Part shown: one piece after another, positions 4,195-63,919 of the stretch
How positions within the stretch are numbered: the first letter of the stretch is position 1
Layout of the letters: each line of letters begins with the position of its first letter
IMG/VR virus record: IMGVR_UViG_3300010158_000027
Coordinates: 186,001 to 250,000 of that record
Direction: 5' to 3' (one strand)
Length of the DNA: 64,000 bases
Notes under the pieces: model-generated
The model's database searches: none
Told to the model about the DNA's origin: nothing
The model's input: only the letters and a program-made list of their open reading frames with translations
Position numbers and translations under genes: made by a program

Positions 4195-4214
4195 TAAATT
4201 TATTTAAAAATTAA

Positions 4215-4248
4215 AAAACCCCTCATCTCTAATACAGGTGGGGGTTTT
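4215..4248 (+). terminator. Intrinsic terminator (AATACAGG family)
   Basis: AAAACCCCTCA...TGGGGGTTTT hairpin with U-tract; near-copy at 49501. Confidence 0.8.
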
Positions 4249-8846: not shown

Positions 8847-9612
8847 TAAAGTGACCCTCGATAGTGTCGATAGTTTTTGTAAACTAAACGGTATTGATGA
8901 TATTGAGAATTTCATTAAGGGGACGTTCAATGATGGGTTCAACATAAAAAAGTATGGACTATTAGGTAAAACACTTAATGATGGTGAAAAAGACTTAAAA
9001 ACGGGTGAAGTTGAAGAAAAACAAGTAATAAAGGAGGTGATTGTCGAAAAACGGGTGGAAGTTCCTGTTGAAGTGATTAAGGAAGTTGAAAAAATTGTTG
9101 AGGTTATTAAAGAGGTTACAGTTGATCGTATTGTTGAGGTAATTAAAGAGGTTCCGGTTGAAAAGGTGGTTATTAAAGAGATTATTAAAGAAGTGCCCAT
9201 TGAGAAAGTTGTCACAAAAATAGAATACATTAGTGACAAAGAATCTGAAAACGAGTTGTTGTTTAAAATACAACAACTTGAACAAACTGTTTTCCAGTTA
9301 AATGATGATTTGGAGTCAGAAAGGCAAGAATTTTCCACTAAAACCCAAGAAATGGCAAATCTTTTCCAGGATGACATATCTAAAAAGGATGAAAGTTTAG
9401 ACGAACTTAGACGGAGTTTAGATGTTAAACAAGACGACAACAAGTTAAAAATGTTACAAGACACCATCCAAACCCTTTCTTCGGAGGTTAGGGGACTTAA
9501 AAAGAAAAACGAAGATTTAGAGAATAAACTGTTAGATTTACCAAACCAACGTGGCGGGATTCCCGCCAAGTTTCATGGTGGTTCTAACCTAAACAATAAT
9601 TTATACAAATAA
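8818..9612 (+). CDS. Coiled-coil protein with V/I-K-E repeats
   Basis: EVIKEVEKIVEV-type repeats followed by a heptad region. Confidence 0.7.
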   Translation: MEPNYSKIFNKVTLDSVDSFCKLNGIDDIENFIKGTFNDGFNIKKYGLLGKTLNDGEKDLKTGEVEEKQVIKEVIVEKRVEVPVEVIKEVEKIVEVIKEVTVDRIVEVIKEVPVEKVVIKEIIKEVPIEKVVTKIEYISDKESENELLFKIQQLEQTVFQLNDDLESERQEFSTKTQEMANLFQDDISKKDESLDELRRSLDVKQDDNKLKMLQDTIQTLSSEVRGLKKKNEDLENKLLDLPNQRGGIPAKFHGGSNLNNNLYK

Positions 9613-17220: not shown

Positions 17221-18417
17221 ATGAAAGAGAAATTTTTACCTTGGTTTTTATTGTTTTGTGCTTTAGGACTGTCAGGAACTGCCGCGTATTATAGTGTTGT
17301 CGGGTTGTCTATAGTGTTTGTTGGGGTGGCGTTACCCGTAATAATAATGGGATCATTCCTTGAAATATCCAAGATTGCAATTGCCACGTATCTCCACGAT
17401 AAGTGGAAAGACACGTACGGAGCGTTAAAGATATATCTAACACTTGCCCTTGTGACGTTATCACTTATCACCTCATTTGGGATTTATGGGTTATTGAGTA
17501 CGGGATTCCAAGGGAATATCGCAAAACTCGAAATCAATGAAAAGAAAGTTAAAAATGTTGAGGTTAAAAAGAAACGTTTTGAGGAGGTAAAGGTGGAACT
17601 AACTGGTGAGAAAAACACATTAGATAGCGACATTACCAAATTAAGAGATGGGTTATCTAATAACACCACCACACAATCTGTTGATAGAAAAACGGGACAG
17701 ATTGTAACAAAGGCAAATAAAGATAATAGACGTTCATTTGAAACCCAACTATTACAAGCCCAAGTAAGACGAGACACATTAGCCAAAAGAATTGATAACA
17801 TGAATGATAGTATCACTAATCTTGATGTTAGTATTTTAAATATGGAATCTGAAGAAATCTCTGGTAGTGAATTGGGAGCATTGAAATATGTTAGTGAATT
17901 ACTTGGTTGGGACATTAAAAAAACTGCAAATCTCTTTATAATGATTCTAATATTTGTGTTTGATCCATTGGCGATAACGTTAGTGATTGCCACAAATCAG
18001 GCGTTTAAGAAAAAAAAGAATCGAGATAATACCGACCAAGTTACCGAGCAAGTTGAACCAATCATCATTGAAAAAATAGTTGAGGTACCTGTTGAAGTTA
18101 TTAAGGAGGTTGAAAAAATTGTTGAGGTTGAAAAAATAGTTGAAGTTGAAAAGATAGTCGAAGTTGAAAAGATTGTTGAAGTTGAAAAGATTGTTGAAGT
18201 AATTAAAGAAATTGAAAAGATTGTTGAAGTACCAGTAAAAAAAGATGTCCTACCGATAGAGGAATATTTTGAAAGAGATGATTACCACAAAACGGATAAT
18301 ATCGAAAAGAACCCAATTGAAGACAATATCAACGAAGTGATAATACAACCGAAGAGGTTATCTTATTCAAATAGAAATAGTAATGACGGAAAATCTATAC
18401 GTATTAACAGATTTTAA
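17221..18417 (+). CDS. Membrane protein with coiled coil and VEKIVE repeats
   Basis: N-terminal TM helices, coiled coil, a further TM, then repeats. Confidence 0.75.
   Translation: MKEKFLPWFLLFCALGLSGTAAYYSVVGLSIVFVGVALPVIIMGSFLEISKIAIATYLHDKWKDTYGALKIYLTLALVTLSLITSFGIYGLLSTGFQGNIAKLEINEKKVKNVEVKKKRFEEVKVELTGEKNTLDSDITKLRDGLSNNTTTQSVDRKTGQIVTKANKDNRRSFETQLLQAQVRRDTLAKRIDNMNDSITNLDVSILNMESEEISGSELGALKYVSELLGWDIKKTANLFIMILIFVFDPLAITLVIATNQAFKKKKNRDNTDQVTEQVEPIIIEKIVEVPVEVIKEVEKIVEVEKIVEVEKIVEVEKIVEVEKIVEVIKEIEKIVEVPVKKDVLPIEEYFERDDYHKTDNIEKNPIEDNINEVIIQPKRLSYSNRNSNDGKSIRINRF
18068..18232 (+). repeat. Degenerate 18-bp tandem repeat (GTTGAAAA(A/G)AT(T/A)GTTGA(A/G)) encoding VEKIVE
   Basis: Directly visible, at least 5 consecutive units. 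Confidence 0.85.
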
Positions 18418-33058: not shown

Positions 33059-33062
33059 TTTT

Positions 33063-34912: not shown

Positions 34913-35275
34913 ATGAGAAAAGATGTAGATAAAACATTAACAGAAATTTCACAAGATATTGTTGAATTGGTTTTAGGTAATAACAATGATAATAGTTTGG
35001 AAGTAGAAAAAGTTAGGGGATATTTGATGGATATTTTTGGTTATGATGCTAATTATAAACTTCACATACACACAGAAATTCCATTTGAATATGAAGAAAA
35101 TTATACATTATTAAGAGATTTGAATGAAGGTGATGTATTCATTACTAAAGCAAATACGGTTTCAATGTATTTAAAATGTGTTGGTGACGATAAACATATA
35201 TTGAGAAATATAAATAGTTGTGATGAATATGAAGTACCACATGGTAAATTTCCAGTGTTTAAAAAAATTAATTAA
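34913..35275 (+). CDS. Hypothetical protein
   Basis: AT-rich accessory ORF. Confidence 0.6.
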   Translation: MRKDVDKTLTEISQDIVELVLGNNNDNSLEVEKVRGYLMDIFGYDANYKLHIHTEIPFEYEENYTLLRDLNEGDVFITKANTVSMYLKCVGDDKHILRNINSCDEYEVPHGKFPVFKKIN

Positions 35276-35277
35276 TT

Positions 35278-35475
35278 ATGAAACATTTTGATGATTTAAA
35301 ATATATTGATTATGTGATTAGATTCACGAATCAACTTGATAGAACAAATGAATTAATGTTAGTTTGTTTGAACGTTATGAAAGATGAACCAACATTGACA
35401 ATACGTGAAGTGATTGAAAAATCATTATTTGGTTTAGATATAGAATTGAATGATTTATTAGTTGAAAAATCTTAA
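35278..35475 (+). CDS. Hypothetical protein
   Basis: AT-rich accessory ORF ending just before an attC-like site. Confidence 0.55.
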   Translation: MKHFDDLKYIDYVIRFTNQLDRTNELMLVCLNVMKDEPTLTIREVIEKSLFGLDIELNDLLVEKS

Positions 35476-35499
35476 TTTGGAACACAAAAGTAGTATTGC

Positions 35500-35593
35500 T
35501 CCTAACAGCTGGGTGTATGAGAAGGTTTGCTTAGATGAACTTTAAAATTACCACTAAACTTGATAGCAAACTTTCTTATACACCTTGTTAGCA
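35500..35593 (+). repeat. attC-like site A (TCCTAAC...GTTAGCA, 94 bp)
   Basis: 20-bp inverted arms; near-identical to 62681-62774. Confidence 0.8.
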
Positions 35594-35664
35594 CCAGTAC
35601 GGTGATTTTAATATAAAACTTGATTAATTGGAAAATAAGTAGTATATTTGTAAAAAATAGAATT

Positions 35665-35817
35665 ATGGAAAATAAAATGGAGATTATTATTACAGATAAA
35701 GAAGGTGTTAGACAAGTATCTTCTTTTTCAGAAAACAAAATTAAACATATAACTGAAACCAATCAATGGGTAGATGTTATTAAAGAAATACTAAAACATA
35801 TAAATAATAATGACTGA
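35665..35817 (+). CDS. Small hypothetical protein
   Basis: First ORF after the site-A promoter. Confidence 0.5.
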   Translation: MENKMEIIITDKEGVRQVSSFSENKIKHITETNQWVDVIKEILKHINNND

Positions 35818-36022
35818 TATTAATACTTTCATACCATCATTTGGTAATTTTATGAGTTATTGTAGTGAAAGTGATATTGAAAAAGATTTATTTAAAGAAA
35901 TTTTTTTTGAGTTTTTGGATAACCCAAAAAAATACAATAATTCAGAAATAATAAAAAAATATTTATCTGAAAAATTACCTATTAACTCATATATTCAATT
36001 AATCAATAAAATAAATTTATAA
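35810..36022 (+). CDS. Hypothetical protein
   Basis: Coupled ORF. Confidence 0.55.
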   Translation: MTDINTFIPSFGNFMSYCSESDIEKDLFKEIFFEFLDNPKKYNNSEIIKKYLSEKLPINSYIQLINKINL

Positions 36023-36025
36023 AAT

Positions 36026-36640
36026 ATGGAAAAAAAATTTAAAATACCAGAAAATGGGTTAATACCGTTTGCTGAACGTGGTCAAACTAAAATAAATACT
36101 GATGATTCTTTTGAGGCAGAACTTATTGATATCGATATTAAATGGATTGAAGATTGTTCAGATGAAGAAGTTGAAGAATTTAAAAATAAAGGGTTTGTTG
36201 AGAAAACAAACACCAATTACGATAAAAAGTTAGAAAAACTTAAATTAAAACTTCGTGATTCATTAAATAAATGTGATGTCAATTATGAAAAAAAACCTTA
36301 TTTTATTAAAAGTTTAAATTTACCATATAAAACGAAAAATGGTGATTATGAACCTAATATTTACAATCACCATTTTAATGATTTATCCTTTTGTAAGGAA
36401 ATAGTGGATGAGACTGATAGTAGAAATCCAGATGATTGGGTTTATTACCCCATTGGGATGTTTTTAAACCATAGAATATTTATGGATATTGAAAGTGAAT
36501 ATTCATACCAAGATATTATTAATTTTTTAGATTGGTTTGAAAATTACCTTAAATCTAACTACAAATTTGTTGGTGATAAAATTTTATTTGGTAATAAAAT
36601 AGTTAAAATTGAAGAAGTTTTTAAAGTATGTGTAAACTGA
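36026..36640 (+). CDS. Hypothetical protein
   Basis: 204-aa AT-rich ORF. Confidence 0.6.
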   Translation: MEKKFKIPENGLIPFAERGQTKINTDDSFEAELIDIDIKWIEDCSDEEVEEFKNKGFVEKTNTNYDKKLEKLKLKLRDSLNKCDVNYEKKPYFIKSLNLPYKTKNGDYEPNIYNHHFNDLSFCKEIVDETDSRNPDDWVYYPIGMFLNHRIFMDIESEYSYQDIINFLDWFENYLKSNYKFVGDKILFGNKIVKIEEVFKVCVN

Positions 36641-36644
36641 AATT

Positions 36645-37118
36645 ATGGAAAATATATTAAAAAGACTTGAATATAAAATATTTAAGGAATATGGAAAAAT
36701 AGTTGGTGTTGTAACCGATTATGTGTGGGATTACAAATCGTATCAGAAAGGTATTACTCAACTTGAACATAATGAAACACTCAATAAATTTGTCTTATAT
36801 TATATGAAAGAATTTAACTTAGATGTGGTTATAACATCTGGAGAAATTTGTACAATATTTGAAAATTTTGATAATTTTTATTTTATAGGTGAAAACGATG
36901 TATATAATTATCAAAGATATAAATCTGATATTAGTAAAGATTTTGAACCATTTTTTTTAATAAAAGAGGATGGTAATAATATTGGAGTTGTGATTAAAAC
37001 CAATTTTAGAATCAAATCACATCATATTATATTAACAAATACTGATGGTTCGAATTATAAAATAATTGATGTTTGGAAATTACCAAACATTAAACTAATT
37101 GAATGTTTTAAAAACTAA
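36645..37118 (+). CDS. Hypothetical protein
   Basis: 157-aa AT-rich ORF. Confidence 0.6.
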   Translation: MENILKRLEYKIFKEYGKIVGVVTDYVWDYKSYQKGITQLEHNETLNKFVLYYMKEFNLDVVITSGEICTIFENFDNFYFIGENDVYNYQRYKSDISKDFEPFFLIKEDGNNIGVVIKTNFRIKSHHIILTNTDGSNYKIIDVWKLPNIKLIECFKN

Positions 37119-37123
37119 AAAAA

Positions 37124-37459
37124 ATGGAAAAAGAAAATTTAAAAAATGGGGTGTACCTCATAAAAGCGGATAGTAAAGATTATAAATTAACAGAAGAACG
37201 TGAAAGTAAAATAAATTCACTTGAAATTAGTGGTGAACATAAAGAGTTTTTCAAAAACATCTTCAAAGAAGAACCAACACCAAAACCATCTGATTTATTA
37301 GTTGAACTTGTTGGTCAAAATCCATTTTTAAAAATAAAATCTGTAAAGAATGTTGACACTGGTGAAGATATAACTGAAAGATTTACTAGTAAAGATGTTG
37401 ATGATGTTAATTGTTTATGGACATTAACTAAAAATTTAAAATGGGTTGACAATTTATGA
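37124..37459 (+). CDS. Hypothetical protein
   Basis: 111-aa AT-rich ORF. Confidence 0.6.
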   Translation: MEKENLKNGVYLIKADSKDYKLTEERESKINSLEISGEHKEFFKNIFKEEPTPKPSDLLVELVGQNPFLKIKSVKNVDTGEDITERFTSKDVDDVNCLWTLTKNLKWVDNL

Positions 37460-42279: not shown

Positions 42280-43155
42280 ACCGACCGAAACAGTCACCAC
42301 AGTTAAAAAAAGTGAATATAACACCTCCCTTTCTTTAAACGTGAAACTAAATTAAGTCATTGGGCCGTGTATGGTCCATTAAAATAAACCACGAAAGTGG
42401 GATAAAGTGAATTTGCGAGTGTTAGTAGATTTGCGTCTTGGGAAACTGAGGTCGAGTACACAAGTGGGATATCATCCGACCTTTAGTATTGAGGGCGACG
42501 CTTTAGGGAAAGTGGTTGGATGGAACGGCAATGTGGATTGTCAGTCTGAGGAGGGAACTCCAATAAGAATAACCCATAGGTATCAAGCGAAAAATATAAA
42601 TTCCAAATATATAATTGCGGATACCATTATAAAAGGGGACTTAAAACCGAAAGGTAAGATAAAGAACGAGTGGTGTCGCTATTATCCCTATCAAAGATCT
42701 ACCAAGATCTTGATATGAAGTAATCTTAAAATATGGAAATGGGGACATTTCACGAGGTAGTCAGGTATTCTGTTTTTCAAAAGAAAATGGATCCTAAACG
42801 GACCGCTACTTTGATTCATCCACAACACACAACTTATTACTAAATTAAGTAAAATTAACTAAAAATAAGCAAAAGTGTTCGTTACGATATGACGGAAGTT
42901 ACCCACCTATTCACTGGCTGTCAGTGGAACGTGATAACCGCAAGTTTGACCGTATTTTTATGAAAAATCTCTAGGACGTCGAAATCCGAATCAGGACGCA
43001 ATCTTGATGAGACAGGAGTAGTAAGAGAGTAGTTGTATCGTCAAGGAGTGATTGGTCTAACCAATCGGTAATGAGTGTTACAGGACAAAATCCTGTGGAT
43101 AAGAGTAGAATACATAATGACTCAAAAGACACTTAATAAAAACTATAATCTCAGG
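42280..43155 (+). ncRNA. Large ornate structured RNA, GOLLD-like candidate
   Basis: ~880 nt without a credible ORF, GC-richer than its flanks; many GNRA-capped stems; long-range GAGAGTAGTT/AACTATAATCTC closing stem; followed by a tRNA. 5' boundary approximate. Confidence 0.7.
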
Positions 43156-43176
43156 TTTTTTTTAATATTCAAATAT

Positions 43177-45960: not shown

Positions 45961-47289
45961 GTCACTCCACCGAAAAACCCAACCATCTTTAGTGGTTGGG
46001 ATGTAAGGTGTGAAATAATTTAATATTTTTTTAATAAAATTCTTCTTTTTGTTAAAACCAAGATATTTATATAATATGAAGGTTATTAACAAATCATACA
46101 AAGTTAGAATTTACCCTAATAAAGAACAAAAAGTTCTTTTGGAAAAACATTTTGGTTGTATTAGATTCGTATATAATCATTTTTTAAATGTTAGAAATCT
46201 GGAATATAAAGAGAATAAAATCAATCTGAATTATGTTGTAACGGCAAATAAACTATCAGAAATGAAAAATTTAGAAAATTTTAACTTTCTTAATGAGGTT
46301 AATTCACAATCATTACAATGGAGTTTAAAATATTTAGATAACTCATTTAGAAACTTCTTCAGAGGACAAACAAAATTCCCTAATTTTAAGAAAAAATCAA
46401 ATAACCAATCATTTAAAGTACCGGTTAATTCTACATTTAAAATAGAAAAAAATAAAATTATTATCCCTAAATTTAGAGAAGGTATCCATTTTAGAGGTAA
46501 ATTAGAATTAAAAAATTTAATTAAATTTAATTCAATTAATATATCCAAAACCGCATCAGGTAAATATTATGCTTCATTACAAGGGGAATTTAATTATACA
46601 CCTAAAGTTCAAAATGATAATAAAGTAGGTATTGACTTAGGTTTAAAAAAGTTTTTAATAACCGATACTGGTGTTAAATTTGACAATCCTAAATTCCTTA
46701 AAAAACAATTAAAAAAATTAAAATACAAACAAAAACAATTAAGTAAAAAAAATAAAGGTTCTAATAATAGACAAAAACAAAGAATTTTAGTATCTTTAAT
46801 TCATGAAAAAATAAGTAATAAAAGAAATGATTTTTTACATAAGTTAAGTCAAAAAATAGTTAATGAAAATCAAATTATCTGTTTAGAAAACTTATCTGTT
46901 AAAAATATGATAAAAAACCATAAATTAGCTCAATCAATATCAGATGTTAGTTGGTCAAAATTTGTTGATATGTTAAAATATAAATCGGATTGGAATGATA
47001 GACAATTAGTTCAGATAGATAGGTTCTATCCTAGTTCTAAAAGTTGTTCCGCTTGTCATTATATAAACGAAGGATTAACATTAAAAGATGGAGAATGGAC
47101 TTGTCCTTCTTGTAATACACATCACGATAGAGATGTAAATGCTGCTAAAAATATCCTTATACAAGGAATAAACATATTGTCTGGTTCGGGAACCGAGTCG
47201 GACATTAAACAAAAACCTGTGGAGGCGTTGCGGTTACGCAAGTCTAAGAAACAGGAATCCCATTCATCTTTAGTGATTGGGTAGTTCAA
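45961..47289. mobile_element. tnpB-only IS200/IS605-family element
   Basis: Subterminal hairpins CCCAACCA-TCTTTAG-TGGTTGGG (45978-46000) and CCCATTCA-TCTTTAG-TGATTGGG (47259-47281); right end ...GTTCAA; left boundary approximate. Confidence 0.8.
46076..47284 (+). CDS. tnpB: TnpB RNA-guided endonuclease
   Basis: SYKVRIYP HTH; RuvC GIDLG, CLENL and DRDVNAA; CSAC/CPSC zinc finger. Confidence 0.93.
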   Translation: MKVINKSYKVRIYPNKEQKVLLEKHFGCIRFVYNHFLNVRNLEYKENKINLNYVVTANKLSEMKNLENFNFLNEVNSQSLQWSLKYLDNSFRNFFRGQTKFPNFKKKSNNQSFKVPVNSTFKIEKNKIIIPKFREGIHFRGKLELKNLIKFNSINISKTASGKYYASLQGEFNYTPKVQNDNKVGIDLGLKKFLITDTGVKFDNPKFLKKQLKKLKYKQKQLSKKNKGSNNRQKQRILVSLIHEKISNKRNDFLHKLSQKIVNENQIICLENLSVKNMIKNHKLAQSISDVSWSKFVDMLKYKSDWNDRQLVQIDRFYPSSKSCSACHYINEGLTLKDGEWTCPSCNTHHDRDVNAAKNILIQGINILSGSGTESDIKQKPVEALRLRKSKKQESHSSLVIG

Positions 47290-50679: not shown

Positions 50680-50829
50680 TGTCAGGTGGTGGAATTGGCA
50701 GACACAAATTGACGGTTATGGTACATACCGCTATCAAGAGAGCCGAATGTCCGTAAACACTCTATGACTTCGGAAGGTGGATAGAAACGTTCAAATAGTA
50801 TCTTGTAGGTTCGATTCCTACTCTGACTA
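50680..50829 (+). ncRNA. tRNA-like element 2
   Basis: GTCAGG/TCTGAC acceptor, GTAGG-TTCGATT-CCTAC T-arm; 99-nt interior. Confidence 0.7.
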
Positions 50830-50899
50830 CAAAGGAAGTATATGAGAGTCCTGAATGTACACAAAAGATCCCTATTGACAGCTGGAAAGACAGCAACAT

Positions 50900-51019
50900 G
50901 GTCAGGTGGCGAAAACTGTTGGCGTCAGAGTATAAAACAAAGGGCAGAGCACAAAACACTGAACATGGGAGAGGCTGAGGAACTTCCATTACTTGCAGGT
51001 TCGAATCCTGTCCTGACTA
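50900..51019 (+). ncRNA. tRNA-like element 3
   Basis: GGTCAGG/CCTGACT acceptor, GCAGG-TTCGAAT-CCTGT T-arm; ~69-nt interior. Confidence 0.7.
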
Positions 51020-51041
51020 CAAAAAATTAAAACAAATAAAT

Positions 51042-51188
51042 ATGGAAGACACAAAACATGCATGCGAATGTGGTTCAACATCAGAAGACTTACATACATG
51101 TCCATTTGCAGAAGATATCAACGGCGATTATGAATCATTATGTAATTGCTGTTCTGAATGTACGCGTGAATGTATGATGGACATTTAA
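51042..51188 (+). CDS. 48-aa Cys-rich small protein (HTCPFAEDINGD..LCNCC.EC..EC.MDI)
   Basis: Translated by eye; 8 Cys. Confidence 0.7.
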   Translation: MEDTKHACECGSTSEDLHTCPFAEDINGDYESLCNCCSECTRECMMDI

Positions 51189-51193
51189 CATAT

Positions 51194-51303
51194 AGTCAGG
51201 TGGCAGAATGGTAGACGCAGAATAAAGAGGTAAAGGTCAATCCTCTATAAAAAATTGAGTAACCTACGGGGTTATATTACAGGTTCGAATCCTGTCCTGG
51301 CAA
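51194..51303 (+). ncRNA. tRNA-like element 4
   Basis: AGTCAGG/CCTGGCA acceptor, ACAGG-TTCGAAT-CCTGT T-arm; 60-nt interior with two hairpins. Confidence 0.7.
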
Positions 51304-51304
51304 C

Positions 51305-51565
51305 ATCGGTTATTTGATCTAGCACTAGGATAATAACAGCCATTAGATGAAGCTAGCGTCGTGAATGGAGGTGTAAGCTAAGACAGACTTACAAAGTTGG
51401 GGTACCAATAGATACAAACCCCCAACACAAACAGATTGACACAAAGGCATGAACAGTGGTGTTGTCGTAAAGTGTTATAAGATTAATGATAGCTAAAAAA
51501 TAAATCTTATAACTAGGCTCTCGGCAGTACGTTATACAATCTGAACAGGTGCTTCCTGTTTATTT
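51305..51565 (+). ncRNA. Hairpin-dense RNA segment ending in a terminator
   Basis: GTTATT/AATAAC, TGTAAG/CTTACA, GTTGGGG/CCCCAAC, CAGATTG/CAATCTG, GTTATAAGATT/AATCTTATAAC, AACAGG/CCTGTT plus U-tract. Confidence 0.5.
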
Positions 51566-51612
51566 TTTACATAATACTTGACAATCTAAAAGTGATGGTT
51601 TAATATTATGTA

Positions 51613-51684
51613 AGTCAGTTAGCTCAGTTGGTAGAGCAATCCCCTTAAAAGGACGTGTCATTGGTTCGAACCCTTTACTGGCTT
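51613..51684 (+). pseudogene. Degenerate tRNA behind its own TTGACA-N17-TAATAT promoter
   Basis: Perfect acceptor (AGTCAGT/ACTGGCT) and D-arm; anticodon and T stems poorly paired. Confidence 0.55.
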
Positions 51685-51690
51685 ATTTTT

Positions 51691-61599: not shown

Positions 61600-61689
61600 A
61601 TAAAGAAAGAATTAGGATGGACTGAACAAACGAGGACAGAAGGACATAGGCAATTTGTTTCTTTGGTTAAACCACAAATGTAGCCTTGT

Positions 61690-61820
61690 TGCTAACGGTT
61701 GAGGGTTTATTTAGTGGCGACTTTACGCACAAAACTTAATTAGAAATACAAAACTTGATAATATGAAAACTGATAATTTGAAACACGAAACTAAGCCATT
61801 GAATAAACCCTTTGTTATGC
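61690..61820 (+). repeat. attC-like site B (TGCTAAC...GTTATGC, 131 bp)
   Basis: Arms AGGGTTTATTTAGTGGC / GCCATTGAATAAACCCT. Confidence 0.8.
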
Positions 61821-62056
61821 GAAGTTTTTTTAAGAAACCAAGTAAGATTATAGAGGTGGAAATCCCAAAAGGTTTTTTCAATTGTGGCGTAAGTGTATGC
61901 AACCACTTTTTTGCAGATACAAATAATAGCGTAGATTGGAAAACGCTTAAATTTCCATTACCAAAACCATTAGGTAAAAAATGGGAGATATTAAGATATG
62001 ATATTGTGAATGAAGAAAAAACCATTGTAGAATTAGTTTCTCGTGGGTGGTTCTAA
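61763..62056 (+). CDS. Cassette 1 ORF (start lies inside site B)
   Basis: ATG within the attC-like loop; GTT crossover is an in-frame Val codon. Confidence 0.6.
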   Translation: MKTDNLKHETKPLNKPFVMRSFFKKPSKIIEVEIPKGFFNCGVSVCNHFFADTNNSVDWKTLKFPLPKPLGKKWEILRYDIVNEEKTIVELVSRGWF

Positions 62057-62062
62057 AATTTC

Positions 62063-62193
62063 GCATAACGATACTCAGATATATGGAGTTTTTTCTTAAA
62101 TTGAAATAATAAACTTAAATAATATGAATAAAGATAATAAGAACACAGAAGTTAATGACACAGATAAAAAATTACATATATCTGATGTTAGAA
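62063..62193 (+). repeat. attC-like site C (GCATAAC...GTTAGAA, 131 bp)
   Basis: Arms TCAGATATATG / CATATATCTGA. Confidence 0.8.
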
Positions 62194-62363
62194 ATAGTAT
62201 TCAAGAACGGATTAAAGGACATAAAAACAACATCAGTAGTTGTTTAGAGTTAATACAGACTAAAGGTAGAGAAACTGATGTTGTTATTAACTTATCAGTT
62301 AGTATTAGGAACTCAGAAATTAGAATATCTGAACTGGAATTAGTTCTTGAATATTGTTTCTAA
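62124..62363 (+). CDS. Cassette 2 ORF (start inside site C, stop inside site D)
   Basis: In-frame GTT; the TAA stop is the TAA of TTCTAAC. Confidence 0.6.
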   Translation: MNKDNKNTEVNDTDKKLHISDVRNSIQERIKGHKNNISSCLELIQTKGRETDVVINLSVSIRNSEIRISELELVLEYCF

Positions 62364-62434
62364 CGTTTTGCAACTACGCTTAACGGCTATCGGAAGCGAA
62401 CGTTTCAAGCCGTTGAGTGTAGATGCTGTTAGGT
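62358..62434 (+). repeat. attC-like site D (TTCTAAC...GTTAGGT, 77 bp)
   Basis: Arms CTACGCTTAACGGCT / AGCCGTTGAGTGTAG. Confidence 0.8.
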
Positions 62435-62464
62435 GCAGTATTTTTAACAAGTAAATTTAAAATT

Positions 62465-62686
62465 ATGATAATTGATTACAATAAAATAATAGAAAAGCAT
62501 TTAGGTGTTAATACTCCTCAATGGATAAAAGACAATGTATATAGTTGCATTAAAGAAATAGAAGAGCAAAATAAAAAAGAATGCAGTTATATCTCAGATG
62601 GAAGGTTTACATCAGGCAATTGTCTTTATTGCGGAAAATCCAAATACACTCACGGTTTATCGGTAGGTTCGTGCTATTGCAGCTAA
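62465..62686 (+). CDS. Cassette 3 ORF with CLYC motif (stop inside site E)
   Basis: Own AAAATT-ATG start; TAA within AGCTAAC. Confidence 0.6.
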   Translation: MIIDYNKIIEKHLGVNTPQWIKDNVYSCIKEIEEQNKKECSYISDGRFTSGNCLYCGKSKYTHGLSVGSCYCS

Positions 62687-62774
62687 CGATTGGGTGTATG
62701 AGAAGGTTTGCTTAGATGAACTTTCAAATTACCACGAATACTCATAGCAAACTTTCTTATACACCTTGTTACAA
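62681..62774 (+). repeat. attC-like site E (AGCTAAC...GTTACAA, 94 bp)
   Basis: 20-bp arms; sister of site A. Confidence 0.8.
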
Positions 62775-62835
62775 CCAGTACGGTTAATTTAAGATAAAAC
62801 TTGACTAATTGGAAAATAAGTAGTATATTTGTATT

Positions 62836-63030
62836 ATGGAAGAAGAAAAACACATTATTGAAACTTTAGCTAATATTGGCGTAGAAAAAGAAACAACGCT
62901 TGAAATAATGCACGAACTCTTATTTAATTCAAGTAACTACGCTGATAATCAAGATGCGATTGACACTATGTTACAAGAAAAATTGGGGATTGATTTATAC
63001 ATAACATTAACACAATATAAAAAAATATGA
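62836..63030 (+). CDS. Cassette 4 ORF a
   Basis: TTGACT-N17-TATATTTG promoter 4-6 nt upstream. Confidence 0.55.
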   Translation: MEEEKHIIETLANIGVEKETTLEIMHELLFNSSNYADNQDAIDTMLQEKLGIDLYITLTQYKKI

Positions 63031-63392
63031 AAAACAGATTTTACATAAAAAACTTTGAAGAAGCCGCTTCATTGAGGAAAAAAGAATTAGACGATGCTTT
63101 GGTTGAAAAATACGAAAAACTCTTATTTCTAGAGAATATCCCAACTGAAGATAAATTAGAATTATCTCAATTGTATGAAGATTTTACTAAGTTTTTAATA
63201 AATGTTGATAATTGTGAAGAAAATTTTCAAACTCTCTTCATTCCGATAACTAAAAAACTATATACTGAGTTTAAAGAAACTGATTTTATTAAAATATTTG
63301 AAATGTATTCAGAGTGGTGTGTTAATTCTAAACTAGAGAATGACGATGAAATATTTAAAGGGTTTATGACGTACTATAAATCGAAGCGATAA
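63027..63392 (+). CDS. Cassette 4 ORF b
   Basis: ATGA-coupled; ends just before TATTGGTTATAAC. Confidence 0.6.
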   Translation: MKNRFYIKNFEEAASLRKKELDDALVEKYEKLLFLENIPTEDKLELSQLYEDFTKFLINVDNCEENFQTLFIPITKKLYTEFKETDFIKIFEMYSEWCVNSKLENDDEIFKGFMTYYKSKR

Positions 63393-63397
63393 TGTAG

Positions 63398-63430
63398 TAT
63401 TGGTTATAACTAGTGGCTATACGAACTTTA
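63398..63430 (+). repeat. Partial attC-like site F (left arm only)
   Basis: TATTGGTTATAAC complements GTTACAACCAGTA of site E; no clear right arm. Confidence 0.55.
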
Positions 63431-63559
63431 AATTGTATAAAAAATGAAAGTTATTGAAAAACAGTTAGATAACCATACAATCAAAATTATGATTATTTCT
63501 CATAGATTTAATAACTTTCCTAATCTTGACTCAGAAGGATGTTTAATACTTAAAAGAAT

Positions 63560-63919
63560 ATGAAAAATAAAATGCTTATAGTGGACGATGAGGAGGATAT
63601 CTTAATATTCTTATCATATCACTTTAATAAAAATGGTTTCGATGTTACAACAGCATTAGATGGAGCCATAGGGTTATCTGAATTTGAAAAGAAAAAATTC
63701 GATATTGTTATAACGGATATACGTATGCCAAATATGGATGGTATAGAAATGTGTGGTGAGATAAAAAAACAAGATGATACAACCCCAATCATATTTTTAA
63801 CTGCGGTTACAGATGATTATAAAATATTGCACGCAATGCGAACAGGTGCGTCCCAGTTTGTTGATAAACCAATCAAACTAGATGAACTAACAGATATCGT
63901 TAACGGTTTAATTAATTAA
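63560..63919 (+). CDS. Stand-alone response-regulator receiver domain (CheY-like)
   Basis: LIVDDE, VITDIRMPNMDG, IIFLTA, FVDKP. Confidence 0.92.
   Translation: MKNKMLIVDDEEDILIFLSYHFNKNGFDVTTALDGAIGLSEFEKKKFDIVITDIRMPNMDGIEMCGEIKKQDDTTPIIFLTAVTDDYKILHAMRTGASQFVDKPIKLDELTDIVNGLIN

What the first reader, a model, noticed from the sequence alone, without database searches (positions are those of the whole stretch)
61690..63410. Integron-like cassette array with attC-like hairpins inside a phage genome
SEEN: five sites begin ..TAAC, and four of them end GTTA.. with 11-20 bp inverted arms (61690-61820, 62063-62193, 62358-62434, 62681-62774; partial site at 63404). The GTT.. end of each site pairs with the ..AAC start of the NEXT site, not with its own: GTTATGCGAA/TTCGCATAAC, GTTAGAAATAGT/ATTGTTTCTAAC, GTTAGGTGCAGTA/TATTGCAGCTAAC and GTTACAACCAGTA/TATTGGTTATAAC. 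Two ORF stops are the TAA of the TAAC box. ESTABLISHED: this offset complementarity is the signature of integron cassettes integrated by crossover at G|TT, because the excised circle restores its own paired R''/R' box. INFERENCE: units of 373, 241, 340 and more than 640 bp are individually mobile cassettes, giving the phage (or its host's recombinase) a gene-capture and shuffling platform. No integrase is present in this window.
Basis: partly seen in the sequence, partly recalled or inferred. Interest (0 to 1): 0.9.

Follow-up and report, generated by a model that had tools for sequence, protein, structure and literature searches.

The report
Orphan integron-like cassette array in phage
The hairpin-bounded mini-genes at 61.6-63.5 kb are real. 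They belong to a large, apparently undescribed family of integron-like gene-cassette arrays that related uncultured big phages carry next to their own small tyrosine recombinase, although this phage's copy has no recombinase beside it.

Summary
Four imperfect hairpin sites lie on the + strand, S1 to S4, each built TAAC, 5 nt, stem, loop, stem, 1-2 nt, GTTA. A hairpin-less junction, S5, follows them. The bases after each GTTA pair with the bases before the next TAAC and not with their own.

The same architecture recurs in hundreds of IMG/VR contigs. In 97 non-redundant relatives the arrays sit just upstream of a 260-265 aa XerA/IntI-like tyrosine recombinase gene. They end at a conserved attI-like junction, N6-TAAC-TATnATATATA.

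Homology between relatives breaks exactly at the TAAC box, and less often at the GTTA box. Stems covary. Next-site complementarity holds in 78% of 297 site pairs, against 5-6% in controls.

- The sites are inverted relative to the genes when compared with bacterial arrays.
- TAAC, not GTTA, is the main crossover box.
- Long sites carry the start codon of the next gene in their loop.

The window has no recombinase. The whole block replaced two genes that a 98%-identical relative still has, and its borders do not fall at the boxes. I read it as an orphan, CALIN-like fragment of a new integron variant.

The parts
61612..61692 (+). Left edge of the block. About 81 nt that are absent from the close relative L002. 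It ends in GTAGCCTTGTTGC just before the S1 TAAC, which reads like the truncated 3' end of an upstream cassette.
   Evidence: Homology to L002 stops at window 61611. The end resembles the family's GTAGTATTG-N4-TAAC consensus.
61693..61817 (+). Site S1, of the 125-nt class. The loop holds the ATG at 61763 of ORF 61763-62056, and the GTT at 61814 is an in-frame Val codon.
61763..62056 (+). Cassette gene 1, 97 aa, with no family match. The unit from TAA|C to TAA| is 61696-62068.
62066..62190 (+). Site S2, of the 125-nt class. Hairpins of the same type, 85-94% identical, occur in recombinase-linked arrays such as L197, L150 and L133.
62124..62363 (+). Cassette gene 2, 79 aa. It starts in the S2 loop, and its stop is the TAA of the S3 TAAC. 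Residues 1-22, encoded by the site, are shared with unrelated genes in other arrays.
62361..62431 (+). Site S3, 71 nt. The + strand folds at -16.6 kcal/mol (z = -3.5) and the - strand at -10.7 kcal/mol.
62465..62686 (+). Cassette gene 3, about 73 aa and Cys-rich. Its stop is the TAA of the S4 TAAC.
62684..62771 (+). Site S4, of the 88-nt class. This type is widespread in related phage arrays at 82-92% identity.
62800..62830 (+). Bacteroidota-type promoter-like element, TTG-N20-TATATTTG, 5 nt upstream of the ATG at 62836. It is conserved with the copy next to X35.
   Evidence: The promoter reading is an inference from the known TTG/TAnnTTTG consensus.
62836..63392 (+). Cassette 4 genes, ORFs 62836-63030 and 63027-63392. 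The second has an 84.5%-identical (aa) homologue that is the last cassette before the recombinase gene in L169 and L206.
63398..63415 (+). S5, a hairpin-less junction TATTGGTTATAAC-TAG... . It closes cassette 4 and resembles the recombinase-proximal attI-like junction of relatives, TAAC-TAGATTATAT.
63411..63563 (+). Right edge of the block. About 105 nt are unique sequence. The rest is the 3' remnant (...LDSEGCLILKRI) of the gene pair that L002 still has intact.
35494..35650 (+). X35, a solitary site of the S4 type (35503-35590) plus a promoter-like element (35620-35650). It lies among small genes whose homologues sit in the recombinase-linked array of L189/L237.

Best explanation
Window 61612-63515 is a recombinase-less fragment of an integron-like gene-cassette array. 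The array type is common in large uncultured phages whose hosts are probably Bacteroidota.

**The full system in relatives.** It has three parts:
- a 260-265 aa tyrosine recombinase close to XerA and IntI;
- a conserved attI-like junction, N6'-TAAC-TATnATATATA, about 55-65 nt upstream of the recombinase start codon;
- up to 13 or more small cassettes upstream on the same strand, with a median unit of about 400 nt.

**One cassette.** It consists of an attC-like imperfect hairpin of about 48, 88 or 125 nt, bounded by TAAC and GTTA, followed by a gene. The cassette's two ends, GTTA-N6 and N6'-TAA, are complementary.

**Inferred mechanism, by analogy with integrons.** The sense strand folds. The recombinase exchanges strands at TAA|C, and more rarely at G|TTA on the other strand. 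This excises a circle whose hairpin gains a perfect extended basal stem, and the circle re-inserts at the attI-like site.

**How it differs from bacterial arrays.** The genes lie on the strand that folds. Each cassette therefore brings its own expression signals: a promoter after the short sites, or a start codon plus a 16-27-codon leader inside the loop of the long sites, with GTT read as Val.

**In this phage.** The block arrived by non-site-specific replacement of two genes. It has no recombinase next to it, so it is now either inert or depends on a recombinase supplied in trans.

**Shown:** the anatomy, the covariation, the linkage to the recombinase and the positions of the breakpoints. 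**Inferred:** the single-strand chemistry, the circular intermediates and any present activity.
For: **Anatomy and statistics in the window:**

**Family-wide scans.**
- A pattern scan gave a bimodal set of true sites with differing stems.
- Next-site complementarity of at least 5 of 6 holds in 233 of 297 pairs, against 5% for a site's own end and 6% for other sites. For the last hairpin against the recombinase-proximal junction it holds in 36 of 45.

**The recombinase.**
- Pfam finds Phage_integrase plus SAM_4. The best NCBIfam families are XerA_Arch 'tyrosine recombinase/integron integrase' and integrase_gron. The best PDB matches are XerA (4a8e) and IntI4 (2a3v).
- There are 202 relatives in viral contigs.

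**Linkage of arrays to the recombinase gene.**
- Site density is 1.26-1.40 per kb in the 3 kb upstream of the gene, 0-0.07 per kb downstream, and close to zero on the other strand.
- The junction next to the gene is conserved.

**Breakpoints.** They fall exactly at TAAC and at GTTA, including between different hairpin types.

**Structure.**
- In the 48-nt class, 98.3% of cells are paired and 10 of 12 stem pairs show double changes. The covariation score is 0.474 against 0.129 in shuffles, reached by 0 of 500.
- Non-Watson-Crick stem pairs are G.T on the + strand 599 times and A.C 77 times.

**Orientation.** Gene orientation relative to the sites is inverted compared with bacterial arrays.

**Loop-encoded starts.** In the >100-nt class, 124 of 200 sites have an ORF that starts in the loop, and GTT is in frame in 90 of those 124.

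**Links from the window to such arrays.**
- The S2 and S4 hairpin types occur in them.
- The homologue of cassette 4 is the recombinase-proximal cassette in L169/L206.
- Syntenic relatives L208 and L237 carry the array plus recombinase in the region collinear with window 35-51 kb.
Against: - No recombinase was found in the window, in the 7.6 kb beyond it, or on this contig among the best 80 hits of two scans. Activity here is unproven.
- The indel against the 98%-identical relative L002 has borders 82 nt before the S1 TAAC and about 105 nt after the S5 TAAC, not at the boxes.
- The recombinase lacks the roughly 48-aa IntI-specific insertion and scores below the NCBIfam cutoffs.
- No attC covariance model could be run.
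- The G.T bias could reflect selection on RNA or strand composition. It is weaker in bacterial arrays, 66 against 39.
- Some gene moves between relatives, such as gene 35278-35475 in L189, are not at sites.
- No circles or recombination products were observed.
Confidence: 0.72

Rival explanations
1. These are PeSL-like regulatory cassettes. The hairpins are terminators or RNA-processing signals joined to promoters, and genes are shuffled only by ordinary homologous recombination between the conserved intergenic modules, as in T4-type phages.
For: - S4 and X35 are each a hairpin followed by a Bacteroidota-type promoter-like element, conserved as one 159-nt module.
- Hairpin modules are at least 90% identical across many phages with unrelated flanks in 1087 of 1103 pairs. 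That is enough identity for homologous exchange.
- PeSLs are described as composite terminator/promoter motifs that mediate such shuffling (PMC2839356, PMC4122927).
Against: - This does not explain the cassette-specific complementary ends, seen in 78% of pairs against 5-6% in controls.
- It does not explain breakpoints at TAAC or GTTA between different hairpin types that share only the 4-nt box.
- It does not explain the one-sided, one-stranded linkage to a tyrosine recombinase gene with a conserved junction.
- No T-run follows the stems.
Confidence: 0.1
2. This is a fragment of an ordinary bacterial integron, a CALIN, picked up from the host chromosome. If it moves at all, the host's IntI moves it, as proposed for the few CALINs reported in phages.
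For: - CALINs were reported in 17 of 10,705 phage genomes, including a Polaribacter phage, and their attC sites recombine with IntI1 (PMC9892861).
- Bacterial and archaeal MAGs carry related recombinases, 40-52% identical, next to arrays of sites with the same geometry.
Against: - The closest recombinases, 53-100% identical to each other, are on viral contigs of up to 362 kb.
- Gene orientation relative to the sites is the reverse of that in the bacterial arrays.
- The hairpin types, loop-encoded leaders and promoters are shared among phage contigs.
- The window's cassettes share the phage's 30% GC and + strand coding.
Confidence: 0.1
3. The sites are purely RNA-level elements, mRNA hairpins that control translation start, stability or processing of each small gene. 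The recombinase nearby is an unrelated lysogeny integrase.
For: - The folded strand is the sense strand.
- G.U-compatible wobbles are conserved.
- Start codons lie in the loops of the long sites.
Against: - Where the promoter follows the site (S4, X35), the gene's own transcript would lack the hairpin and its 5' partner.
- Homology breakpoints sit at the boxes.
- The N6' at the recombinase junction pairs with the last hairpin's N6 in 36 of 45 loci.
- The bacterial relatives have the same sites antisense to the genes.
Confidence: 0.06

Closest known systems
Integrons, and in particular clusters of attC sites lacking an integrase (CALINs) reported in phages (Qi et al. 2023, PMC9892861)
   Same: - Arrays of small cassettes are separated by imperfect hairpins of 48-125 nt with AAC/GTT cores.
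- Structure is conserved more than sequence.
- The R-box ends are cassette-specific and complementary.
- Stop codons often sit in the TAAC box.
- In relatives there is a tyrosine recombinase plus an adjacent attI-like junction.
- DNA methyltransferases are a frequent cargo.
   Different: - The recombinase is about 265 aa, lacks the IntI-specific insertion and is phage-encoded.
- It lies at the 3' end of the array and is co-oriented with the genes.
- The genes are on the folding strand, inverted relative to the attC sites.
- Cassettes carry their own promoter or a loop-encoded start codon and leader.
- Flank consensus extends to TATTG-N4-TAAC and GTTA-N4-CAGTA.
- Arrays are long and common in one group of large phages, not rare two-site clusters.
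Chromosomal arrays next to small XerA-like 'tyrosine recombinase/integron integrase' genes (NCBIfam NF040815) in bacterial and archaeal MAGs, for example Ignavibacteriota L336 and Desulfitobacterium L313
   Same: - The recombinases are related, 40-52% identical.
- Site geometry and length classes are the same.
- The array polarity points towards the recombinase-proximal end.
   Different: - In bacteria the genes are antisense to the orientation used here for the sites, and the recombinase gene faces the array.
- Bacterial loops do not hold the phage-type start region.
PeSLs (promoter-early stem-loops) of T4-type phages (PMC2839356, PMC4122927)
   Same: - Small accessory genes lie in a hypervariable region of a large phage.
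- Each is bounded by conserved hairpin/promoter modules at which relatives differ by gene swaps.
- Circular intermediates have been proposed.
   Different: - PeSL exchange is homologous recombination.
- PeSLs have no dedicated recombinase, no 4-nt crossover boxes and no cassette-specific complementary ends.
Vibrio superintegron VCR arrays
   Same: - A few highly conserved site types are attached to very diverse genes.
- Identity stops at the core boxes.
   Different: - The host, the enzyme and the gene orientation all differ.
- The phage arrays mix three length classes within one array.

Membership tests
Integron (IntegronFinder sense) | An IntI tyrosine recombinase with the IntI-specific additional domain, next to the array. 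| tested here: not met
   The window has none. In relatives the adjacent recombinase aligns to IntI4 in two stretches and lacks about 48 aa between them. TIGR02249 scores 156-164 bits against a cutoff of 265.
Integron (IntegronFinder sense) | attC sites: imperfect hairpins of about 50-150 nt with conserved ...AAC and GTT... cores, an unpaired spacer, an inner stem and a variable loop. Structure is conserved, sequence is not. | tested here: met
   The geometry TAAC, 4-6 nt, stem, loop, stem, 0-3 nt, GTTA was found in 348-458 distinct sites. Covariation supports the stems. Bacterial arrays next to related recombinases fit the same template.
Integron (IntegronFinder sense) | Detection by the curated attC covariance model (IntegronFinder or HattCI). 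| not testable with these tools
   The model is not in Rfam. The Rfam scan of the window found only GOLLD and a tRNA.
Integron (IntegronFinder sense) | The variable part of the box at a cassette's start is complementary to the box at that same cassette's end, so that in the array the complementarity is offset. | tested here: met
   In the window it is 8, 7, 7, 7 of 9 against 1, 2, 5, 4. Across the family it is 78% against 5-6%.
Integron (IntegronFinder sense) | An attI site between the recombinase gene and the first cassette. | tested here: inconclusive
   Relatives have a conserved TAAC-TATnATATATA junction 55-65 nt before the gene. In the window, S5 shares only TAAC-TAG with it and no gene follows.
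Integron (IntegronFinder sense) | Promoterless genes that precede their attC and are read from a common Pc promoter. | tested here: not met
   The genes are on the folding strand (69% against 8% ORF cover). They have promoter-like elements after the sites or start codons inside the sites.
Integron (IntegronFinder sense) | The crossover is at the conserved triplet of one box (G|TT, equal to AA|C on the folded strand). | tested here: met
   Homology switches exactly at TAAC in 12 of 13 pairs that share the upstream gene, and at GTTA in 13 of 30 pairs that share the downstream gene. This is comparative evidence only. No biochemistry was done.
CALIN (cluster of attC sites lacking an integrase) | Two or more attC sites close together with no integrase nearby. 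| tested here: met
   Four hairpin sites lie within 1.1 kb. There is no tyrosine recombinase in the 64-kb window or in 7.6 kb beyond it. The sites were called with my own template, not with IntegronFinder.
PeSL regulatory cassettes | A composite terminator-like stem-loop plus promoter, conserved between small genes, with exchange by homologous recombination. | tested here: inconclusive
   S4 and X35 fit the composite layout. S1-S3 do not. Breakpoints between different hairpin types and the complementary ends are not PeSL properties.

The most novel reading that the evidence does not exclude
A previously undescribed class of phage-borne integrons has four features. A minimal XerA/IntI-like recombinase lacks the IntI-specific domain. 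An attI-like site sits just upstream of its gene. Long arrays of very small cassettes follow, in which the attC hairpin lies on the sense strand. That hairpin doubles as the expression module, holding a promoter or a start codon plus an in-frame leader that ends at the GTT crossover codon. The class is spread over at least 150-200 contigs of large uncultured phages and carries methyltransferases and hundreds of unknown small genes. The window holds an orphan fragment of such an array.
Probability: 0.6. Interest if true: 0.9.

Novelty: new variant of a known kind. Interest (0 to 1): 0.8.

Why it matters
Integrons are regarded as bacterial devices. In phages, only a few short attC clusters and captured host integrons have been reported. 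A phage-encoded recombinase with its own long cassette arrays would be a dedicated mechanism for the rapid turnover of small accessory genes in large phages, which probably include anti-defence genes and methyltransferases.

It would also give two things to test:
- An enzyme of only 265 aa that may act on folded single strands without the IntI-specific domain.
- A natural design in which the recombination site also supplies the translation start, so that gene bodies are swapped in frame at a Val codon.

For this window, the result explains a 1.9-kb difference from a 98%-identical relative.

Tried and rejected
- **Rfam.** The scan of the window found no family at the sites.
- **Missing partners.** I looked for the partner of the S1 left box (GTTAGCAACAAG) and of the X35 right box (TGGTGCTAAC) in the window. 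No convincing match was found.
- **Other copies of the flank motifs.** Exact copies occur only at X35 and S3-S5.
- **Relaxed hairpin template.** At 10 of 12 arm pairs the hits are at the chance level, so no further sites are claimed.
- **Canonical reading.** I first assumed that each hairpin belongs to the upstream gene with the crossover only at G|TT. I rejected this because hairpins travel with the upstream gene in 1 of 13 informative pairs, and because bacterial arrays have the opposite gene orientation.
- **TAAC-only reading.** I then assumed that only TAAC is a crossover. I corrected this after finding 13 pairs that break at GTTA.
- **Clustering of cassettes.** Clustering 362 cassettes to trace reordering gave only 10 two-member clusters. 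The cargo is too diverse for that test.
- **Window cassette proteins.** There are no Pfam hits. Only cassette 4b and the site-encoded leader of cassette 2 have relatives in the fetched loci.
- **Edges of the block.** Neither edge has a homologue in any fetched locus.
- **Recombinase on this contig.** This contig is not among the best 80 hits of two scans. The whole 281-kb contig could not be read, so absence is likely but not proven.
- **Covariance model.** I did not build one of my own, because loop lengths differ too much between the classes.
Full report
**1. What is in the window**

The window is positions 186001-250000 of a 281-kb IMG/VR contig. It is about 31% GC and nearly all its genes are on the + strand. 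Its content is typical of a phage: primase, sigma factor, endolysins, SbcCD-like nuclease, homing endonucleases, methyltransferases and a GOLLD RNA. Only the thymidylate synthase gene shows DNA similarity to isolated phages, namely Flavobacterium phages.

At 61.7-63.4 kb there are four imperfect hairpin sites on the + strand:
- S1, 61693-61817
- S2, 62066-62190
- S3, 62361-62431
- S4, 62684-62771

All share one geometry: TAAC, 5 nt, stem, loop, stem, 1-2 nt, GTTA. A fifth element, S5 (63398-63415), is a hairpin-less junction, TATTGGTTATAAC-TAG.

The 9 nt after each GTTA pair with the 9 nt before the next TAAC at 8, 7, 7 and 7 positions. They pair with the site's own left flank at only 1, 2, 5 and 4 positions. 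The observed arrangement is the single best of 120 permutations. One long-range pair runs for 27 nt.

With a fixed template, 5 sites are found on the + strand and none on the - strand, against about 0.9 expected per strand. The fifth site, X35 (35503-35590), is 89% identical to S4 together with the promoter-like element TTG-N20-TATATTTG that follows it.

Two ORF stops are the TAA of a TAAC box. The ORFs at 61763 and 62124 start inside the loops of S1 and S2 and read through GTTA, with GTT as a Val codon.

**2. The family**

A scan of IMG/VR for the flank consensus TATTG-N4-TAAC...GTTA-N4-CAGTA gave a bimodal result. Twenty-four matches had the same hairpin geometry but different stem sequences. 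Several of those contigs hold arrays of 4-12 sites on one strand.

One array, in L123, is followed by a 265-aa tyrosine recombinase gene. Two searches with this protein and a relative found 202 and 152 viral loci.

In 97 non-redundant loci:
- Sites occur at 1.26-1.40 per kb in the 3 kb upstream of the gene.
- They occur at 0-0.07 per kb downstream of it.
- They are almost absent from the other strand.

Arrays end at a conserved junction, N6'-TAAC-TAT(T/C/A)ATATATA, 55-65 nt before the start codon.

Over the family, the 6 nt after a GTTA pair with the 6 nt before the next TAAC at 5 or more positions as follows:

| Comparison | Pairs with at least 5 of 6 |
|---|---|
| Next site | 233 of 297 (78%) |
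| Own site | 5% |
| Other sites in the locus | 6% |
| Last hairpin against the recombinase-proximal junction | 36 of 45 |

Site lengths fall into classes of about 48, 88 and 125 nt, and the median unit is 396 nt. In the 48-nt class, 10 of 12 stem pairs show compensatory double changes around an invariant loop, and the covariation score is reached by 0 of 500 shuffles.

**3. Where exchange happens**

Among 458 distinct site contexts I compared pairs that share only one flank.

- Thirteen pairs share only the upstream gene. Identity ends exactly at TAAC, or TAACG, in 12 of them. Most of these 12 are followed by hairpins of unlike sequence, which rules out homologous exchange inside the hairpin.
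- Thirty pairs share only the downstream gene. The hairpin is shared too in 17, and identity then begins exactly at TAAC. In the other 13, identity begins exactly at GTTA behind a different hairpin.

Both boxes are therefore exchange points. TAAC is the commoner one, and it is also the box at the recombinase-proximal junction.

A clear single case is L067 7077-7453 against L094 4051-4427. The two are 98.4% identical and sit between unrelated neighbours.

Hairpin types themselves are few and conserved. Of 1103 pairs at least 90% identical, 1087 share neither flank.

**4. Orientation**

Bacterial and archaeal genomes hold homologues of the recombinase at 40-52% identity. These score at or near the cutoff of NCBIfam NF040815, 'tyrosine recombinase/integron integrase'. 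Next to them are arrays of sites that fit the same template. In those arrays the genes are antisense to the site orientation: ORF cover is 13% on the site strand and 75% on the opposite strand. In the phage arrays the figures are 69% and 8%.

So in the phages the strand that corresponds to the recombinogenic 'bottom' strand of a bacterial attC is the coding strand. Two results are consistent with this:
- The + strand folds better than the - strand in all five window sites.
- Non-Watson-Crick stem pairs are G.T on the + strand 599 times and A.C 77 times. This bias is weaker in the bacterial arrays (66 against 39), so it may partly reflect RNA or strand composition.

A consequence is that the sites carry the expression signals. 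In 124 of 200 long sites an ORF of at least 40 aa starts in the loop, and GTT is in frame in 90 of these. The leader of the window's cassette 2, residues 1-22, is found on unrelated genes elsewhere, and the homology stops at the Val.

**5. The recombinase**

Pfam finds Phage_integrase plus SAM_4. The best NCBIfam hits are XerA_Arch (184-197 bits, cutoff 220) and integrase_gron (156-164 bits, cutoff 265). The best solved structures are Pyrococcus XerA (4a8e) and Vibrio IntI4 (2a3v). The IntI4 alignment skips about 48 residues of IntI4 (180-258), a stretch that from my own knowledge covers the IntI-specific domain.

No isolated phage in GenBank has a homologue above 41% identity.

The enzyme is close to both Xer and IntI, but it is not a member of the curated integron-integrase family.

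**6. This phage**

No recombinase homologue is found in the window or in the 7.6 kb beyond it. The contig is not among the best 80 hits of either scan.

Syntenic relatives carry the array plus recombinase inside the region collinear with window 35-51 kb. In L208 it lies between the homologues of the genes at 38.4 and 44.8 kb. In L237 the homologues of window genes 35264-37147 are themselves cassettes of the array. X35 and its small neighbours may therefore be what remains of this phage's own array.

The 61.6-63.5 kb block is absent from L002, whose flanks are 95-98% identical. L002 has two paralogous genes in its place. The window keeps only their first 8 codons and their last 15 or so.

The borders of the block lie 82 nt before the S1 TAAC and about 105 nt after the S5 TAAC. 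The block therefore came in, or replaced the genes, by a non-site-specific event.

The left end of the block looks like a truncated cassette end. Its last cassette has its homologue at the recombinase-proximal position in L169/L206. This suggests that the donor was the proximal end of a recombinase-linked array.

**7. Comparison with what is known**

Qi et al. 2023 (PMC9892861) reported 3 complete integrons and 17 CALINs in 10,705 phage genomes, and showed that five phage attC sites recombine with IntI1. I found no paper in the held library that describes phage-encoded recombinase-linked arrays of this kind.

PeSLs of T4-type phages (PMC2839356, PMC4122927) are the nearest phage analogue for modular shuffling. 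They work by homologous recombination and have neither crossover boxes, nor complementary cassette ends, nor an enzyme of their own.

**8. Verdict**

The integron-like reading is right in kind. It needs correcting on orientation, on the main crossover box and on the status of this copy, which is an orphan.

The mechanism rests on analogy and on comparative breakpoints. No recombination product has been seen.

Noticed in passing
window 42753-43157 (+): A full-length GOLLD RNA (RF02032, 277 bits). Relative L214/L135 has a 71%-identical copy about 4.4 kb downstream of its recombinase gene.
   Followed up: partly
window 50803-51305 and 51612-51685 (+): Three copies of a 29-nt tRNA-3'-end-like repeat containing GGTTCGAATCC are not called as tRNAs. 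One tRNA call has an odd two-base anticodon according to ARAGORN. Parts of this stretch recur in L002 and L004.
   Followed up: no
window 46049-47281 (+): An IS605-type OrfB/TnpB gene (HTH_OrfB_IS605, OrfB_IS605 and Cas12f1-like TNB domains) lies inside the phage genome.
   Followed up: no
window 3768, 43340, 47747, 49147 (+): Four paralogous genes share a conserved 96-nt start region (MKK..LTESDLTRIV...). A 264-nt repeat at 33061 and 48689 is 79% identical.
   Followed up: no
L002 10475-11836: The close relative has two paralogous genes that end ...PYLD(S/K)(D/T)GCLILKR(I/L) where the window has the array. The window's ORF 63444-63563 is their 3' remnant.
   Followed up: yes
array-bearing loci L019-L123 (65 ORFs of 170 aa or more): DNA methyltransferases are strikingly common near and within the arrays: N6_N4_Mtase in 8, C5 in 3 and D12 in 2 of the 65 large ORFs. 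GIY-YIG and LAGLIDADG homing endonucleases are also present.
   Followed up: partly
L054 (- strand) 4205-4222; L189 2423-2450; window 63398-63415: Hairpin-less or nearly hairpin-less versions of the site exist, TATTG-GTTATAAC-CAGTACGG and TAAC-ATTT-GTTA. They form an 18-20 bp near-palindrome, as if the hairpin had been precisely deleted.
   Followed up: partly
L336 (Ignavibacteriota MAG), L313 (Desulfitobacterium sp. Sab5 chromosome), L332 (Altarchaeum MAG): Bacterial and archaeal chromosomes carry arrays of 4-9 sites of the same geometry next to small recombinases, 316 aa in L336, that seem to lack the IntI-specific insertion; insertion not checked directly. Standard integron definitions may miss these arrays.
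   Followed up: partly
window 18091-18230 (+): An 18-nt tandem repeat inside ORF 17221-18417, encoding VEKIVE-like units. A related 126-nt copy lies at 9046-9171.
   Followed up: no
window 35264-35482 versus L189 3489-3704 and L054: The small gene 35278-35475 sits at different places relative to its neighbours in three phages, and no site flanks it in L189. Not every gene move in this region uses the boxes.
   Followed up: partly
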